Positions 19,752 to 53,312 are shown, numbered from the stretch's first letter. The stretch is DNA of 64,000 bases from Lytechinus pictus (GCF_037042905.1 NC_087256.1:6944001-7008000); one strand, 5' to 3'. Numbers and translations are program-made. The notes: a model not told the origin generated them from the sequence alone.

Positions 19752-21884
19752 TATAGGCGCACAAAATCTGCAGGTACTATTGTTAATTAATTTAAAAGGC
19801 AATTAAAATAATTCAAAGAAGGCATGCTGCTGTTTTTTTTATTCCTTCATACCATTTGTGTGATTATCATTATGACCATTGGCTGCTAAGATCCTACATT
19901 AACGTTGGCTTTTCTATGATTGGAATGAAATCGCAAACGAACTAAATGCTATCAGGAAAACTTCAATCCAATTAGCATTCACCCCACCTCCCCATAATCT
20001 ACTTCTCAATTAAAGTTCACATCGAGACCACTTTGAAATTTGTTTGACGTCGCGGTAAATCATTGGGGTGGCGTATTTATAGTTTCCTGCTTTGTTTGCC
20101 ACGTGACCTAGTGCCGAAGTGTCACCTCTCCCCGCCCAGCGGATTCTTATCGATTGCCAAGGCATGTCGTCTGCCGATGTGCGGTGTGTGTTGCCATGGT
20201 GAAGTAAAGCCCGTGGAACCCACGTCATCCCAAATCGGAATAAAGACGCAAATTTATATCATTTCAAGATCAGACTATGTCCCTAGATCATGAATGCCCC
20301 CGAGGTGCTGGGAAATCCAAGAGAACTTGGGTAATATATTTAAACAGGTTCGACTCCGCGGGGCTTGAAGCTTGAAGACTCTGTTAAGCCTCAGATCGGT
20401 GGCATTCGACCATGTAGTAACATAATCATGATTGTTTCAACATAAAAATATTTCGTTTTGTTGTATAATGCTTGTTCAAACAGCGTGATCAGAGGACATT
20501 GTCCTTTGACAAGAAGAATAACCGTTATTGTTTTTTTTTTTCATTCTATCCGTGTTCTTAATACGAATAGAGGTAATAAAAGTCTTCTGACTTGACTGGT
20601 CTGCATACTCATTACCGTATGACCTGAGGCAAAACCTATGATAATTTTAAGAACAAATAGTCTAGGTGATTGGTGAAAAAAATGTTCAAAAAATGGTACA
20701 AGCATGAAAATCGGTACAAAGGTAGAGTAAGTTATTCTAATTATTTTTAGCAGGGGGTGCCAACGTGAGTTCACTAAACATAGCAACGGTTGCTAGGTAA
20801 CATATTTACCCTATTAACTGAGCTTAATTGGGCTTGAGTAACAATTTCACAAGCGATATGTCATACAAATTTAAATCTAAAGCATGTTCCTTTGTATCAC
20901 AACAGTTTTTATCCATTATTCATAGCAACGGTTGCTCAGTGACCCTCTTCCGTAGCAACAAATTCTTTATCTTAGTTCAGATCATTATAATTTACTCGGA
21001 ATAGCTCAGAAATCAAATCTGGCCCATAGATTCCTCATGTGATGAATGTTTCAATAGGTAGACACAAATGAACACCATAGCAACTGCTGCTAAGTAACAT
21101 TTTCCACGGTAACCAATTATTATAGGGTATCTTTTTCATGATTATAATTTCTATGAATCGCATCTTTTCTATTAAAGCATTAATACATTAATCACAACAA
21201 CCCAAGAACAATTATACCATGTATTCAAGCCCATGCGAAATAACAGTTGCTAAGTAATATGTTTTCTGTAGCAACCAATGGTTAAAGGTCGTATGGTAAG
21301 ATCATTGATGTGTGTAAATCATATAGGTACTAATAGATACTTAAAAAGTAGAAACTTGCACAAATTAAACTACCTCGTGATATGGTTCATATTTCCAAAG
21401 ACGATGTCTATGTGTTCCATATTATTGGTATAATAATATTTATTGCATGTTAAAAGAACCTCAACACCAATCTTTATCTATTTTGAACCATATTTTGAAT
21501 TAACCTAAACATATGTAAAAGATCGACCATTGGAAAGAATCCCACAATATCAACATTTAGCAAGAGGTCAGTCACTCTTGTAGAAGAACGGTTACTATAT
21601 AGAGCTCACTAGGAGGTCATAGGTACTTACAACCTAAATATATCTGATCTTAGAGAGATAACCACCAAGAATTGATTGAGTCAACTAAGTTTAGAATTAT
21701 TTCAAACATCAAAATCTTGCCAGAATGAGTGCTTGGATACTACGTTATCCCTTGCTAACAGTAGTCGTTCGTTTTAAAGCCAACACTCTTTGCCTTGGTT
21801 TACCCACTCCCTTCCGCTGTTCCGTAGCCTGTAATGAAGATCATATTAGTTCTCCATGCCGTTCCCAAACCGAATGCCACGGGC

Positions 21885-22752
21885 AGGAGTTGATTTTGAC
21901 CAGGCGTTTTAACTTACATCAATCCTGCGCAGCTGAGGGATCTATCGTGACGTGACAGATGTGTTAGTATTGATTGGGACCATTCAATTCTGTTTCCTGG
22001 CCTGTCGGCCTGGATCCTGCAGCTACGTGATCTATCATGACTTCTGCAGAAGTTGATTGGCACCTGTTAGTTCCGATTCCAGGTGTTCTGACCAGGAACA
22101 ATCCTGCAGTTCCAGGATTTGTCATCACGTGAAAGATTTCGCAACAGTTGATTTTGACCAGCCAGTTCTGTTTTCAGGCGTGCTGGCCTGGATCCTGCAG
22201 CTCAGGTATCTATCATGACTTGAAAGCTTGTGCAGAAGTTGATTTGCAACTGTCCGTTATTTTTCTAGGTGTTTTGACCTGGATCAATCCTGCAGCTCCA
22301 GGACTTAGCATCACTTCAAAGATCTGTTAGATTTGATTTGGACCACTCAGTTCCGTTTTCAGGCGTGTTGGTCTGGATCCTGCAGCTACATGATCTATTG
22401 TGACTTCTGCAGAGGTTGATTTGGACATATCAGTTCCTATTCCCAGTGTTTTGACCTGGATTAATAATGTAGCTCTGGGATCTATCATGATGTGAAAGAT
22501 CTTGCTAGAGTTGATTTGGACCTCAGTGTCAGTTCCGTTTCTAGGCATGTTGGCCTGGATCCTGCAGCTATATGATTGATCTATCATGACTCGATCCTGC
22601 AGAAGTTGATTTGGACCTGTCCTTTCTGTTTCCTGGTGTTTTGACCTGGATCAATCCTGCACCTCCATGATCCATGACTTGAAAGCTTGTGTAGAAGTTG
22701 ATTTCACCTGTAAGTTCCAATTGCAGGTATTTTGGCCGGGATCCTGCAGCTT
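21885..22752. repeat. Degenerate ~87-95 bp tandem repeat with alternating subtypes (GATCCTGCAGCT core) inside the Academ-like element
   Basis: CTGCAG-type cores at 22017, 22104, 22195, 22290, 22380, 22467, 22562, 22657 and 22744. Confidence 0.85.
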
Positions 22753-24094
22753 GTATGTATGTATGTATGTATTTATTTCCATATAAAACAAATAATATAC
22801 ATAATCAAATTACAAGAAGAAAAAGAAAAATCGTCAAATGAAATATGGAGGATTGCCCATTTCAGCGGCATTAACATAATGCCGCTGTTCTTCCATGGGG
22901 TCCTTTGCAACGTAAACATGGTAAATACGTATTATAACAAAAAAATACACAATACTTAATCAGTAACATAACAAGGAAAAAAATGCAAAGACTAAAACTA
23001 ACTTACGGTTAAAAAATATCCCATTGTGGAAATGCCCCCCTCCCCTTTAACCCACCCTACTATTGATTACTTAAACGCCCAATTTAGTCTGTTATTACAC
23101 CGGTTACTATCGTATGGCAGTGAATAAGGGATTGCGGATTTCAAATATCAAAATAGTCAAAAAAAATCTGAACGTGTTTATTAAATATATTAAGTGTGTC
23201 CAGCTGGCGTAGCTTGAGTGGTAGTTTATTGTACAAGACAGATCCACGATATAAGAATGTACGTTTACATTGATTTGTTCTTGGTTTGGGAAGCATTAGG
23301 TCTGAATTTGATCTTAGTCCATAGTGCTTTTCGTTAAAAACAAATTTATCAGTCATATAATCGGGCGTTAACTTATGGAATGTTTTAAATAATAATGCGT
23401 ACATGTGTCTCCTACGACGAGACTTTAGAGTTTCCCACTTCAACACATGGTGAATATGATGAACTGATTTATGTTCATAGGGGTTGACTCGAAGAATAAT
23501 TCTTCCCGCTCTATTCTGGAGCTTCTGGATTTGGTCAAGATAATTTTTATTGGTACTTTGCCAAACAGTGTCCGCATAATCGAAATGGGGTAAAATCACA
23601 GAAGAATAAATCAATTTGAGATTTGACTCGTTAATAAAATATCTCAGTCTCCTTAGAAAACCAATAATTTTCCCAATCTTTTTGTTCAGTTGCTCTATAT
23701 GAATATTCCATTTAAGTTCAGGGTCCAAATTTAATCCAAGATATTTGAAATTCGTCACTTGATTTAGTCTATCTGAATTTAACTTGATATTGAGAGTATG
23801 ACGTTTAGAAAGCATACTCTTTGTTCCAATTAACATACACACTGTTTTACTAGAGTTTATCATGAGTCTATTTATATTCATCCAAGACTGGAGGTTACCT
23901 AACTCTTCATTTAATACAGATTGAATCTCATCAACATCATTATGGGAATAATACAGAACCGTATCATCGGCATAGAAATGCAACTTACACTTTGTAAAGA
24001 ACAATGGTAAATCGTTAATGAAAATCAAGAACAACAGCGGGCCTATTATTGACCCCTGAGGCACTCCATAATCAAGGGTTAATACATTAGATAA
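22753..24094 (-). mobile_element. 5'-truncated L2/CR1-group LINE, copy 1 (RT C-terminal half, 3' UTR and (TACA)n tail)
   Basis: ORF 23141-24139 has the RT motifs GVPQGSIIGPLLFLIFINDL, YADD and FKYLG, and a C-terminal LPKPRTN...RTFLYRG..LYN.LP. The minus-strand 3' end reads AAATAAATACATACATAC at 22753-22778. Confidence 0.93.
23141..24094 (-). pseudogene. Reverse transcriptase (LINE ORF2) C-terminal fragment, ~317 uninterrupted codons
   Basis: RT motifs as above. The first ~15 residues of the listed ORF (MMLSPGAAGLIQVKT) come from the flanking repeat, not from the LINE. Confidence 0.9.
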
Positions 24095-24577
24095 TGTTTT
24101 GACCTGGATCAATCCTGCAGCTCCAGGACTTAGCATCACTTCAAAGATCTGTTAGATTTGATTTGGACCACTCAGTTCCGTTTTCAGGCGTGTTGGTCTG
24201 GATCCTGCAGCTACATGATATATTGTGACTTCTGCAGAGGTTGATTTGGACATATCAGTTCCTATTCCCAGTGTTTTGACCTGGATTAATAATGTAGCTC
24301 TGGGATCTATCATGATGTGAAAGATCTTGCTAGAGTTGATTTGGACCTCAGTGTCAGTTCCGTTTCTAGGCATGTTGGCCTGGATCCTGCAGCTATATGA
24401 TTGATCTACCATGACTCGATCCTGCAGAAGTTGATTTGGACCTGTCCTTTCTGTTTCCTGGTGTTTTGACCTGGATCAATCCTGCACCTCCATGATCCAT
24501 GACTTGAAAGCTTGTGTAGAAGTTGATTTCACCTGTAAGTTCCAATTGCAGGTATTTTGGCCGGGATCCTGCAGCTT
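24095..24577 (+). repeat. 483-bp direct duplication of 22270-22752
   Basis: Near-identical at offset 1825. I noticed only two substitutions. Confidence 0.93.
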
Positions 24578-25346
24578 GTATGTATGTATGTATGTATTTA
24601 TTTCCATATAAAACAAATAATATACATAATCAAATTACAAGAAGAAAAAGAAAAATCGTCAAATGAAATATGGAGGATTGCCCATTTCAGCGGCATTAAC
24701 ATAATGCCGCTGTTCTTCCATGGGGTCCTTTGCAACGTAAACATGGTAAATACGTATTATAACAAAAAAATACACAATACTTAATCAGTAACATAACAAG
24801 GAAAAAAATGCAAAGACTAAAACTAACTTACGGTTAAAATATATCCCATTGTGGAAATGCCCCCCTCCCCTTTAACCCACCCTACTATTGATTACTTAAA
24901 CGCCCAATTTAGTCTGTTATTACACCGGTTACTATCGTATGGCAGTGAATAAGGGATTGCGGATTTCAAATATCAAAATAGTCAAAAAAAATCTGAACGT
25001 GTTTATTAAATATATTAAGTGTGTCCAGCTGGCGTAGCTTGAGTGGTAGTTTATTGTACAAGACAGATCCACGATATAAGAATGTACGTTTACATTGATT
25101 TGTTCTTGGTTTGGGAAGCATTAGGTCTGAATTTGATCTTAGTCCATAGTGCTTTTCGTTAAAAACAAATTTATCAGTCATATAATCGGGCGTTAACTTA
25201 TGGAATGTTTTAAATAATAATGCGTACATGTGTCTCCTACGACGAGACTTTAGAGTTTCCCACTTCAACATCTGGTGAATATGATGAACTGATTTATGTT
25301 CATAGGGGTTGACTCGAATAATAATTCTTCCCGCTCTATTCTGGAG
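24578..25346 (-). mobile_element. 5'-truncated L2/CR1-group LINE, copy 2 (shorter)
   Basis: Near-identical to 22753-23521 with the same 3' junction. ORF 24966-25271 equals the C-terminus of copy 1. It is followed by a 91-bp duplication (25347-25437 matches 24487-24577). Confidence 0.93.
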
Positions 25347-25571
25347 CCTCCATGATCCATGACTTGAAAGCTTGTGTAGAAGTTGATTTCACCTGTAAGT
25401 TCCAATTGCAGGTATTTTGGCCGGGATCCTGCAGCTTCAAGATCGATCATGACTTGATAGATCTTGCTGGACTATGCGCATCTGACTCTGTCACCTACGT
25501 ATGTGAAGCACTTGTGATATAGGTTGGCTCGATGCGATCCATACTCGGTCACAGAACAGTAGCATGAAGTT

Positions 25572-25848
25572 CTGGGCCCCGTTGTACAAAGAGTTACAAT
25601 TGATCCGATCAATCGTTACTCTATGGAAATCCATCAGTGACATAATTTTTTCTAAAGGAAATTTGCAAAATGACCTTTGTAATCAAAGGAGAACACTCCA
25701 GATTGTCAAGAAATCAATGAATTTATGGATATGCATTCATATCTAGATTTTTTTTGGAACAAACATGCATTTCGTATGTTGACTTTGCTGGCTTTCCATA
25801 GTTGCGATTGATCGGATCAATCGTAACTCTTTGTACAACGGGGCCCAG
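25572..25848. mobile_element. Harbinger-type MITE (CWG flanks included)
   Basis: TIR GGCCCCGTTGTACAAAGAGTTAC and its complement, flanked by CTG and CAG. A second family member is at 39991-40242. Confidence 0.88.
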
Positions 25849-26309
25849 ATATGCTTCTTCCTTCCATATACCTCCAATACTTCTTGGAATGTCCAACTCA
25901 GATAGAAATGATTCTGCTGATGGCACTACCACTTTATTTCGCAATATAATTTTCTTATCATATGGAGAGAAATGTTTCTTACACTTTGATTGATTAACAA
26001 TTAATTGTCCCACCGAAGAGGATGATGACTGTAACTTTCTTGATATATTCCTCTGTTGCATCTGATATTCTTTGTAAAGTGTACTGCATGTTTCACAGTG
26101 GTGTTGTTTTCCCGTACTCAGGGACCTGGGAACGATTTTTTCAGTGGGGGTGCTGAAATCTCTCCTCAGAGGTGGGGGGGGGGGACAGACACAATTGAGT
26201 TTAACATAATTACACATACCACACACACACACATATATATAAATATACATATATATGACAGTCACTTCTTGGCTTTCTTCTTATAAAAGAACATAAATAT
26301 ATAATTAGA

Positions 26310-27150
26310 TAATTCGAGCGCGAAGCGCGAGCTATTTTTTGTGGAAATTTCATGTATTTTGTCCTGAAAATTGAACATTTTGAGCAATGTTTGTGGTCCA
26401 AGATGCGTATGTAACAAATAATAATTGTGAGCGCGAGCAGATATTTTTTTATATACGCTCTGGCCTGATCGAAAGGGACGTGTTATAAGGACTGTTTTGC
26501 AGTTACCCATGAAGACGATACATATATCAACAATCAAATAATGCGAGCGCGAAGTGCGAGCTGAAAAATTTGACATTCCGACCTAAATACTGGACATTCT
26601 AAGCACGTTTTTTAATTATGAGCAGGATAGGTATATTTACAATTGATGCGAGCGCGAAGCGCGAGCGGAAACAAAATTGAGATTTCAGACCAAAAAAACC
26701 GAGAGATTCTAAGTACTTTTCTAATCATGATGAGTATAGGTATAAAACTATACAATTGATGCAAGCGCGTAGCGCGAGCGGAAATAAAAATGAGATTTCA
26801 AACCTAAAAACGAGACATCTTATGCACTTTTCTAATCATGAACAGGATAGGTATATAACTATACAATTGATGCGAGCGCAAAGCGCGAGCGGAAACAAAA
26901 TTGAGATTTCAGACCTGAAAACGGGACATCTTATGCACTTTTCTAATCATGAACAGGATAGGTATATAACTATACAATTGATGCGAGCGCAAAGCGCGAG
27001 CGGAAACAAAATTGAGATTTCAGACCTGAAAACGGGACATTCCATTCATGTTTTGTAAATCAAGAAAATGATGGGTAATTGGATATATTCTTAAATTAAT
27101 AATGTGAGCGCGAAGCGCGAGCAGAAATTTTTTGATATTCTGATCTGAAA
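26310..27150. repeat. ~111-bp internal tandem repeat carrying GCGAGCGCGAAGCGCGAGC
   Basis: Motif at ~26315, 26543, 26648, 26761, 26872, 26983 and 27105, and again at 27783. The period is 111-113 bp in the central copies. Confidence 0.88.
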
Positions 27151-27660
27151 CTCCACACTGAATGTAAAATGGTTTGAACAGATAAAGAAAACTCAGACGA
27201 ACATAAGAATAAAGATTTGATTAAAATCAGACAAGGAATCACAGTTATTGCATTTTAAAGATTAGCATTATTCCCCACTTTTGTATTTTATTATATAAAA
27301 TTAGGTTTATTCAATATTTTCCTTTCAAGAACCAAAACAGTTGAATTGACAACTGATTTAGTCCATTAGATATTCTTTGCTGCAACTTATTTCATTATAA
27401 GGGAGACATATCATTCATTCTGGTATGAAAAAAATGAAACAATTTTGATTCCACAAGGAACAGCTAGGATAGTGGGGATGTGACAGCATCAGCCCACCTA
27501 TTAAATATTCATGACGACATGCATATCACCATTTTCATAAAAATATTGCTAAACTTTAGAATTAAATAACTTAACTAATCGTTATCAGATTTTGATAAAA
27601 TTTATTTATTTTGATAAAATGTATTTGATATAAATATTTTCAGCCCGGAGTACCCCCCCC
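27151..27660. mobile_element. Decayed Kolobok-like MITE nested in the hAT element
   Basis: Interrupts the 111-bp array. It begins CTCCACACTGAA and ends TTTTCAGCCCGGAGTACCCC, and is related to 8607-8770. Confidence 0.55.
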
Positions 27661-29084
27661 CAAAAAAAAATCAAGCTGGTGAAGCTGCGTATCTGAATAA
27701 AACATGCGTGCGCGTGTTTAGAGTTAGACCTATATAGTATCTGGGCATTCTAAATACAATTTTTATGATAAAAATCAATAATGCGAGCGCGAAGCGCGAG
27801 CAGAAAACATTTGATATTCCGATCTGAAAGAGGGTGAATTTAAACACTATTTCAAGTAATGTGTCAGAAAATTCTGAAGTGGGGGGGGGGGGGTTCTACA
27901 AAACGTCGTTCATTTTCATTACATTTCTGTCATTTATCATACCTACCACTAGATTTCCAGGAGGTGCGCTGCCTATATATATGGAAAATAACACACGCAG
28001 CACCCCCAAATTTTGAGGTTGCTTCACCCCGAACACCCCCGCTTCCCAGCCCGTAGGGCCATGGGGCAGGGCGAAAAAAAGACTGTGAAATTTGATTTCT
28101 ATTACTTGTAATTTTTGTATACAATACACGGGCGGTCGGGCGCGCGCTCACTTGATTCGACATAAAACCTGGAAGTTTCAACCACCCCAGTGTGTATCAC
28201 GTATTGCGCGCGACTACGTCTGTATCGGAGTGGAGTGGCTGCCCCGCTGGAGCTTGATTGAGTCGCGTTATATAGGAGGGATGTTATTGGAATATGTGAA
28301 AGACTATATAAATGATTTGCGATTGCCTGATGTGATAATTATGTACATTATAACATATTAAAAAAAATACAGGGGGAACCTAATTTCGTGGGGGTGCTGC
28401 CTATGGAAAATAATACACGCAGCACCCCCAGGATAATTTTTGGGGGTGCTTCAGCACCCCCAGCACCCCCGCTTCTCAGGTCCCTGCCCGTACTTATGAT
28501 TAACCCAGACAGTCTTAACTTAAATTTTGGACTAAATATAATTATGCCCTACTTTGATTAGGCATGTGCAACACATAAAATGTACGTTCGATTAATTCGC
28601 TAGAATTGTACCCGAAGTCCCAAGGTATTGGAAGCTTACAGTGTAAATATAAATAATTTATTTTCCCTCATTATCTGAAAACTTTTGCAAAATATCATGT
28701 AAATTATGTAAATGACTCAAGTGCCCGGCATTATGACCAAATAAAAGCGATACATAAAGTGGCAATTGCTTCAAGTAAACTTGGGATTAGAATCATTAGT
28801 GTTTTTTTAAAGATGCTTAAATATAATGGGCAAGAATGATGAAGAAAGTCTTTCAAGCAGGTCGGAAAGCTCTGTACCAACACCTTTACATTGCTTTCTT
28901 CCAACCATACTTTTTGATGACCTGGTACAACATACAACAGCTTGCATATTACCGCTTCATCTCATGATTTGTAGGATGCGGCGTTAATGATTAGTGTCAA
29001 TTACAGAGATAACCATTTCTCTTAAAATAATTTGTTGTATAATCGACAAATGTACTGCTTCCTGACATATTCACAAGTGGTGCA

Positions 29085-53105: not shown

Positions 53106-53312
53106 NNNNNNNNNNNNNNNNNNNNNNNNNNNNNNNNNNNNNNNNNNNNNNNNNNNNNNNNNNNNNNNNNNNNNNNNNNNNNNNNNNNNNNNNNNNNNNN
53201 NNNNNNNNNNNNNNNNNNNNNNNNNNNNNNNNNNNNNNNNNNNNNNNNNNNNNNNNNNNNNNNNNNNNNNNNNNNNNNNNNNNNNNNNNNNNNNNNNNNN
53301 NNNNNNNNNNNN
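53106..53312. other. Assembly gap (207 N)
   Basis: Run of N. Confidence 1.

What the first reader, a model, noticed from the sequence alone, without database searches (positions are those of the whole stretch)
22270..25437. Twin LINE copies sharing one 3' junction, with 483-bp and 91-bp target-site-like duplications
Seen: the order is A483 (22270-22752), long LINE (22753-24094), A483 again (24095-24577), short LINE (24578-25346), the last 91 bp of A (25347-25437), then LINE-free host repeat. Both LINE 3' ends join after ...GGATCCTGCAGCTT but are 5'-truncated at different points. The copies differ by only a few bases. Known: TPRT duplications are normally about 20 bp or less, and L2/CR1 elements often leave none. 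Inference: a plain tandem duplication cannot give two different 5' truncations and then return to LINE-free sequence. This points to two rounds of priming at the same nick with very long staggered repair, or to template switching during integration. The short-copy junction has imperfect microhomology (LINE CTGGAGCTTC versus host CTGCACCTCC).
Basis: partly seen in the sequence, partly recalled or inferred. Interest (0 to 1): 0.7.

Follow-up and report, generated by a model that had tools for sequence, protein, structure and literature searches.

The report
One LINE insertion, copied twice locally
A single jumping-gene (LINE) insertion into another repeat duplicated 483 bases of its target, and then part of the LINE plus target was copied once more; this is a rare but known kind of messy retrotransposon integration, and no sequencing reads were available to confirm it.

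Summary
The layout is in the assembly exactly as described: A483, LINE 1342, A483, LINE 769, A91, then host. The two A+LINE units differ at 6 of 1252 bases. LINE-free copies of the host repeat show that A483 runs straight into the downstream host sequence, so 2,685 bp were added at one site.

Both LINE copies carry the same tail, four extra ATAC units. No other of the 97 family 3' ends in the 811-Mb genome has it, and tails differ between other insertions. All six differences are private changes from a shared ancestor. The family shows no target preference and no long TSDs in 14 other insertions.

I read this as one priming event and one cDNA, not two. The seamless A91-to-host joint means at least one long target duplication arose at integration. 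The second, shorter LINE+target copy was DNA-templated. It arose either in the same episode by template switching or later by unequal exchange plus deletion; I cannot tell which.

LINE-mediated tandem duplications are known for human L1. Public runs gave only ~100-bp contigs, so an assembly error is not excluded.

Two unchecked first-reader notes report similar long LINE duplications elsewhere in this genome.

The parts
21078..22269 (+). Upstream part of the host dispersed repeat, including the start of its internal 91-bp tandem array (array 22101-22751)
   Evidence: Collinear with LINE-free family copies such as L052 positions 1-1500. TRF finds period 91, 7.1 copies, 64% matches.
22270..22752 (+). 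A copy 1: 483 bp of host repeat ending at the LINE 3' joint. It keeps the ancestral base at both A1/A2 difference sites.
22753..22772 (-). Tail of the long LINE copy. On the + strand it reads GTAT x5, which is the element's terminal ATAC plus four extra ATAC units.
   Evidence: This variant is absent from the other 95 family 3' ends.
22753..24094 (-). Long LINE copy, 1342 bp. It is the 5'-truncated 3' part of a ~5.07-kb APE-type LINE, with an open RT C-terminal reading frame at 23141-24094.
   Evidence: RVT_1 E=9.8e-15. The family continues at least 1.5 kb further 5' in other copies. Full length is ~5.07 kb with Exo_endo_phos and RVT_1 domains.
24095..24099 (.). Joint J1: 5-bp microhomology TGTTT shared by the LINE continuation and the first bases of A
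   Evidence: Other copies match 5 bases past 24094. In the LINE sense they read ...AAACA before the truncation point.
24095..24577 (+). A copy 2: 483 bp with two private substitutions (24220, 24409)
24578..25346 (-). Short LINE copy, 769 bp. It has the same tail and the same 3' joint as the long copy, and three private substitutions (24840, 25272, 25319).
25346..25347 (.). Joint J2: short LINE joined to A position 393, with 1 bp of overlap (C)
   Evidence: This joint is unique in the genome.
25347..25437 (+). A copy 3: the last 91 bp of A, identical to both other copies. Its length equals one period of the host array.
25438..25574 (+). Host repeat downstream of the empty site. It follows A483 directly in LINE-free family copies.

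Best explanation
One target-primed reverse transcription event produced everything here.

Integration (inferred from the layout). A ~5-kb APE-type LINE nicked the + strand of a host dispersed repeat after ...CTGCAGCTT, at the last unit of the host's 91-bp array. One cDNA was made, with an unusual tail of four extra ATAC units. The cDNA's 5'-truncated end was not joined next to the nick. It was joined 483 bp upstream through a 5-bp microhomology (TGTTT). That gave A - LINE1342 - A - host: a LINE-mediated tandem duplication, or giant TSD.

Second copy. The unit A + first 769 bp of LINE was then copied again as DNA. It ends in a nearly blunt joint to A position 393.

The second step has two possible routes, which the sequence cannot separate. 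I rate them about equally likely.
(a) Same repair episode. Second-strand synthesis primes inside the cDNA from a 91-nt overhang, and the leftover cDNA flap re-anneals upstream and copies the new strand.
(b) Later events. Unequal exchange or slip-back occurs between the two 483-bp repeats, followed by a 965-bp deletion.

Shown: the layout, the empty site, the shared unique tail, the private-only differences and the microhomologies. Inferred: the order and nature of the copying steps.
For: - Empty site: A483 is directly followed by the downstream host sequence in at least 8 LINE-free family copies. A maps as one contiguous block in L052. The added DNA is therefore L1342+A483+L769+A91, and the A91-to-host joint is original target DNA. 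That can only be explained if a LINE 5' end was joined upstream of the nick at integration.
- One cDNA, tail evidence: both copies have the same tail and the same joint base. Of 97 exact family 3' ends, 82 continue with AAAC and only these two continue with ATACATAC. Tails differ among other insertions, including the closest relatives at 98.5-99.2%.
- One cDNA, substitution evidence: at all 4 LINE and 2 A difference sites, one copy keeps the family state and the other is private. The two copies also share 11 derived sites. A-A divergence (0.41%) is about equal to LINE-LINE divergence (0.52%).
- No target specificity: 3' flanks of about 20 other copies share no motif.
- Precedent: J1 has 5-bp microhomology, as in microhomology-mediated LINE 5' joining (PMC2881922). 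L1-mediated tandem duplications from small to Mb scale are described in PMC7058536 and PMC11702581.
Against: - No read-level confirmation.
- A 483-bp flanking duplication is not a habit of this family. None of 12 truncated and 2 full-length copies examined has a clear TSD, long or short; one copy inside a satellite (L015) cannot be scored.
- Route (b) needs three rare events at one 3-kb locus. Route (a) needs an unproven flap re-annealing step.
- The 91-bp piece matching the host array period is unexplained by either route.
- Private changes are uneven, 1 in unit 1 against 5 in unit 2. With six events this is not significant.
Confidence: 0.62

Rival explanations
1. Two rounds of reverse transcription were primed on LINE RNA at the same nick, or at the regenerated identical 3' end ...CTGCAGCTT, within one integration episode. 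Very long staggered repair then left 483-bp and 91-bp duplications.
For: Both copies have perfect TSD geometry and the same joint base. If the RNA itself ended in the ATAC repeats, two initiations at its terminus would give identical tails.
Against: No genomic source with that tail exists among 97 family 3' ends. Tails vary from insertion to insertion, even in the young subfamily, so a fresh initiation would be expected to differ. A nick already extended by cDNA is no longer available as a primer without extra steps.
Confidence: 0.12
2. Two independent retrotranspositions, separated in time, hit the same nucleotide. The second hit landed in the duplicated copy of the site.
For: The family was recently active: an unrelated copy on C21 is 99.2% identical to the long copy. 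The target sequence is present twice after a first event.
Against: The family shows no target motif. Both events would need the same otherwise unseen tail at the same length. Both would also need abnormal long duplications that 14 other insertions lack.
Confidence: 0.03
3. Assembly artefact. Alleles or paralogous repeat copies were stitched together, and the real locus holds one LINE.
For: No read support could be obtained. The best public runs hold only about a quarter of the locus words, and as ~100-bp contigs. Another copy of the same host family (C11) also shows kb-scale 99.8-100% local duplications, so either such duplications are common or this assembly makes them.
Against: There is no gap nearby; the only N run is at 53106-53312. 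The two novel joints have 5-bp and 1-bp overlaps, which overlap or k-mer assemblers do not create. The two units differ at six sites, so distinct reads must underlie them. A concatenation of haplotypes would not create the LINE769-to-A393 joint.
Confidence: 0.12
4. Purely DNA-level history. An ordinary insertion without a TSD was followed by tandem duplication and a complex replication template-switching event (three switches, or use of an empty homologue as template).
For: Young kb-scale local duplications without LINEs occur in this genome. J1 microhomology fits replication-based switching.
Against: It must place exactly the last 91 bp of A between a LINE breakpoint and the original downstream host with a seamless joint. 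That needs an empty allele as template, or three precise switches, which is less parsimonious than a joint made at integration.
Confidence: 0.08

Closest known systems
L1-mediated tandem duplications at insertion sites (human tumours and L1-expressing cell models; PMC7058536, PMC11702581)
   Same: A 5'-truncated LINE cDNA with its tail at an endonuclease-type nick sits between two direct copies of the target. The cDNA end is joined upstream or elsewhere rather than beside the nick.
   Different: Here it is a germline, fixed-in-assembly event in an invertebrate genome. The LINE has a microsatellite tail, not poly(A). The duplication is 483 bp. There is an extra nested partial copy (LINE769 + 91 bp), which those papers do not describe in the passages I read.
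Ordinary TPRT target-site duplication (review PMC2881922)
   Same: Direct repeats lie immediately on both sides of the element. The distal copy is continuous with the unoccupied site. There is microhomology at the 5' joint.
   Different: The lengths, 483 and 91 bp, contrast with the 12-18 bp reported for L1 (PMC11702581). Other insertions of this same family show no TSD at all.
Unequal exchange and deletion within a young tandem duplication (NAHR or replication slippage)
   Same: It explains a second LINE copy with an identical tail and joint, equal A-A and LINE-LINE divergence, and a near-blunt deletion joint.
   Different: It cannot create the first A-LINE-A arrangement, and it needs two further events.
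Twin priming / 5' inversion of LINEs
   Same: One integration episode yields two LINE segments truncated at different points.
   Different: Twin priming gives inverted segments without intervening target. Here both copies are direct and are separated by 483 bp of target.

Membership tests
APE-type non-LTR retrotransposon (LINE) | Reverse transcriptase domain | tested here: met
   RVT_1 E=9.8e-15 on window 23141-24094 minus strand. RVT_1 E=8.6e-31 in a full-length family member.
APE-type non-LTR retrotransposon (LINE) | Apurinic-type endonuclease upstream of the RT | tested here: met
   Exo_endo_phos E=5.2e-6, above the curated cut-off, in L074:3405-3905. This part is absent from the two truncated copies in the window.
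APE-type non-LTR retrotransposon (LINE) | Common 3' end with variable 5' truncation and a simple-repeat tail | tested here: met
   Copies share the 3' end and start at many different 5' points. Tails are (ACAA)n-type and vary in length.
   No reference LINE library was available. The word search returned 5,655 unnamed RT proteins.
TPRT target-site duplication | Identical direct repeats abutting both ends of the element, with the distal copy continuous with the empty site | tested here: met
TPRT target-site duplication | Short length, set by a small stagger between the two nicks | tested here: not met
   483 and 91 bp.
TPRT target-site duplication | A comparable duplication at other insertions of the same family | tested here: not met
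   None of 12 truncated and 2 full-length copies shows a clear TSD; one copy inside a satellite (L015) cannot be scored.
LINE-mediated tandem duplication | A single LINE cDNA bridges the two copies of a duplicated target segment, with tail at the nick and microhomology at the far joint | tested here: met
   The tail abuts 22752. 5-bp TGTTT microhomology at 24095-24099.
Simple tandem duplication | Head-to-tail copies with one novel joint, the second copy running on into what followed the first | tested here: not met
   There are two different novel joints, and the second LINE stops at 769 bp and returns to host.
   No Pfam hit in the three longest ORFs around the host copy. The host is a dispersed repeat with at least 40 copies but remains unclassified.

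The most novel reading that the evidence does not exclude
The nested layout (target, long LINE, target, shorter LINE, target suffix) is the signature of a single, reproducible way of resolving LINE integration. The second strand primes inside the cDNA, and the unused cDNA flap re-invades upstream and copies the new strand. This pathway would recur across LINE clades in this genome. Two unchecked scan notes hint at that: an L2 with a ~404-bp TSD, and an RTE 'inserted twice' with 352-bp and 137-bp duplications.
Probability: 0.25. Interest if true: 0.7.

Novelty: new variant of a known kind. Interest (0 to 1): 0.42.

Why it matters
Fixed germline insertions that keep a record of how the 5' end of a LINE was attached are scarce. 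That attachment is the least understood step of target-primed reverse transcription.

This locus keeps the empty site (through paralogues), both joints and a tail that marks a single cDNA. It therefore shows that one integration can duplicate hundreds of bases of target and even re-copy part of the element.

If the same nested pattern recurs in this genome, it would define a resolution pathway that creates local segmental duplications in animal germlines, not only in tumours. If it does not recur, this is a single curious by-product of ordinary processes.

Tried and rejected
- Read support: the only runs offered were Logan contigs with 0.10-0.28 of the words. Laid contigs are ~100 bp and mostly come from other family copies, so nothing could be said about either joint.
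The survey rests on 14 copies.
- Host classification: no Pfam hits.
- The third genomic hit to the ATAC-tail pattern (C11:19159742): only a 76%-identical relative, not a source.
- L015, whose flanks look like a 130-bp TSD: the LINE sits in a ~46-bp satellite and the flanks are simply in phase, so it is uninformative.
- The C11 X-Y-X arrangement in another host copy: it looked at first like a second retroposon with a 1.5-kb TSD. Y is unique DNA repeated again 3.9 kb away, so it is a LINE-free segmental duplication.
- LINE-LINE identity as evidence of common origin: rejected as decisive, because an unrelated copy is 99.2% identical.

Full report
**What is there**

- A copies: A (483 bp) lies at 22270-22752 and again at 24095-24577, with two mismatches.
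- Third A piece: the last 91 bp of A recur at 25347-25437 without any mismatch.
- Long LINE: 22753-24094 (1342 bp), on the minus strand.
- Short LINE: 24578-25346 (769 bp), on the minus strand. It aligns to the long copy without gaps, with four mismatches.
- 3' joints: both LINE 3' ends abut the same host base (after ...CTGCAGCTT).
- Whole units: over 1252 bp the two A+LINE units differ at six sites (0.48%). A-A divergence is 0.41% and LINE-LINE divergence is 0.52%.
- Uniqueness: nothing else like this repeat exists in the window. Probes across both novel joints match only this place in the 811-Mb genome.

**The element**

- The 317-aa open frame at 23141-24094 (minus strand) is the C-terminal part of a reverse transcriptase (RVT_1).
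- Other genomic copies continue at least 1.5 kb further 5'.
- Two long copies align over ~5.07 kb. They carry an Exo_endo_phos endonuclease piece and RVT_1.
- The family is therefore an APE-type LINE, and both window copies are 5'-truncated.
- I could not assign a clade, because the protein word search returned only unnamed RT fragments.

**The host and the empty site**

- The LINE sits in a dispersed repeat with at least 40 copies. That repeat contains an internal tandem array of 91-bp units.
- In LINE-free copies, the last bases of A run directly into the sequence that in the window follows 25437.
- A maps as one contiguous, single-copy block, for example L052 1015-1500.
- So relative to the unoccupied site, 2,685 bp were added: LINE1342 + A483 + LINE769 + A91.
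- The same comparison shows two later insertions in this host copy: a TIR element at 25575-25847, and 2.4 kb at 26112-28491.

**The joints**

- Other family members match five bases beyond 24094. In the LINE sense they read ...AAACA just before the truncation point.
- The long copy's 5' joint therefore carries a perfect 5-bp microhomology (TGTTT) with the first bases of A.
- The short copy's joint has 1 bp of overlap.

**One cDNA or two?**

This is the key test, and the tail decides it.
- In about 20 other copies, the element's terminal ...AAATAC is followed by (ACAA)n-type repeats of varying length, and once by (ACA)n.
- In both window copies it is followed by four ATAC units, to the same length.
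- Genome-wide, the 19-nt family 3' end occurs 97 times. Of these, 82 continue with AAAC.
- Only the two window copies continue with ATACATAC. The one other hit to the shorter ATAC-tail pattern is a 76%-identical relative.
- The closest relatives of the window copies (98.5-99.2% identical) all have different tails. Tail form is therefore set anew at each insertion.
- At each of the four LINE difference sites, one window copy keeps the family state and the other carries a private change. The same holds for the two A differences.
- The two copies share 11 derived sites.
- The family has no visible target motif.

Two independent insertions would need three coincidences: the same nucleotide, the same otherwise unseen tail, and two abnormal duplications. 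I reject that reading. Two fresh primings on RNA in one episode are also disfavoured, because a new initiation should give a new tail. The second LINE copy is best read as a DNA-templated copy of the first cDNA together with its upstream target.

**What must have happened at integration**

- The A91-to-host joint is seamless and identical to the unoccupied site.
- A later DNA event could only put the last 91 bp of A exactly between a LINE breakpoint and the untouched host in two ways. It could use an empty allele as template, or make several precise switches.
- The simple reading is that a LINE 5' end was joined upstream of the nick when the element integrated. That is a TSD-like duplication far longer than usual.
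- The long copy cannot derive from the short one. The minimal histories are therefore H1 and H3.
- H1: integration gave A-LINE1342-A-host, through the 5-bp microhomology 483 bp upstream. Slip-back or unequal exchange between the 483-bp repeats then added a unit, and a 965-bp deletion trimmed it.
- H3: a single episode. The second strand primed inside the cDNA from a 91-nt overhang. The remaining cDNA flap re-annealed upstream and copied the new strand. Worked through on paper, this reproduces the observed order exactly.
- The sequence does not separate H1 from H3.

**Is it a family habit?**

No. Twelve truncated and two full-length copies show no clear TSD, long or short. One copy inside a satellite (L015) cannot be scored. 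A larger survey was blocked.

**Base rate of local duplication**

Another copy of the same host family on C11 carries kb-scale 99.8-100% local duplications without any LINE. Young local duplications therefore do occur in this genome, or in this assembly.

**Known parallels**

- The general TPRT scheme allows the second nick to fall at variable positions and uses microhomology at the 5' joint (PMC2881922).
- L1 insertions that bridge tandem duplications are described in human tumours (PMC7058536).
- Small tandem duplications at insertion sites, and template-switching RT at the primary end, are described in an L1-expression model (PMC11702581).
- The A-LINE-A core is thus a known kind of event. 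The nested re-copy is a variant I did not find described in the passages read.

**Artefact?**

I could not test this with reads. The available runs are short Logan contigs holding about a quarter of the words, and the pieces shown come from other family copies. Four points argue against an artefact:
- There is no nearby gap.
- The joints have 5-bp and 1-bp overlaps.
- The units differ at six sites.
- Concatenated haplotypes would not make the LINE769-to-A393 joint.

I leave about 12% for it.

**Earlier notes of this scan**

Two unchecked first-reader notes elsewhere in the same genome describe an L2 LINE with a ~404-bp TSD (s1-317639), and an RTE LINE 'inserted twice at the same nucleotide' with 352-bp and 137-bp duplications (s1-294639). 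No coordinates are given, so I could not test them. If they are real, they would favour a reproducible single-episode pathway.

**Verdict**

Long TSD-like duplication and possible template switching hold; two primings do not.
- This is a new variant of a known kind, of moderate interest.
- Long-read confirmation is outstanding.

Noticed in passing
window 25575-25847: A 273-bp element with 50-bp terminal inverted repeats (94% complementary). It is inserted in this host copy and absent from paralogous copies. The contig depth laid on it in public runs is enormous, so it is a very abundant MITE.
   Followed up: partly
window 26112-28491: A 2.4-kb insertion into the host repeat, relative to paralogues. 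It contains a 111-bp tandem array (26508-27040, 4.8 copies, 84% matches) with a GCGAGCGCGAAGCGCGAGC core.
   Followed up: no
L060+L059 (G000:C11:27181693-27187662): Another copy of the same host family carries young local duplications without any LINE. A 1,547-bp block is repeated at 99.8% with a 2,079-bp offset, and a 532-bp unique block is repeated at 100% 3.9 kb away. This is either real recent tandem duplication or an assembly artefact.
   Followed up: partly
L025 and L026 (G000:C8:27585284-27585906 and C8:39158285-39158898): Two LINE segments of this family abut in opposite orientation (query 169-424 inverted next to 525-894), as in twin priming. The same composite occurs at two places on C8.
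   Followed up: no
L074:1598-1630 (G000:C16): A full-length family copy starts with an 11-base direct repeat of its own first bases (CACCGACTATA twice). This may be a trace of how full-length 5' ends are attached.
   Followed up: no
L028:2123-3372 (G000:C17): A tandem repeat with a 405-bp period at 97-98% identity lies next to a LINE copy. It may be the 405-bp tRNA-bearing repeat described in another note on this window.
   Followed up: no
window 25347-25437 versus 22101-22751: The 91-bp duplicated piece has the same length as the period of the host's internal tandem array. Its left edge lies within 4 nt of the phase of the insertion nick. Neither proposed history explains this, and it could be chance (about 5%).
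   Followed up: partly
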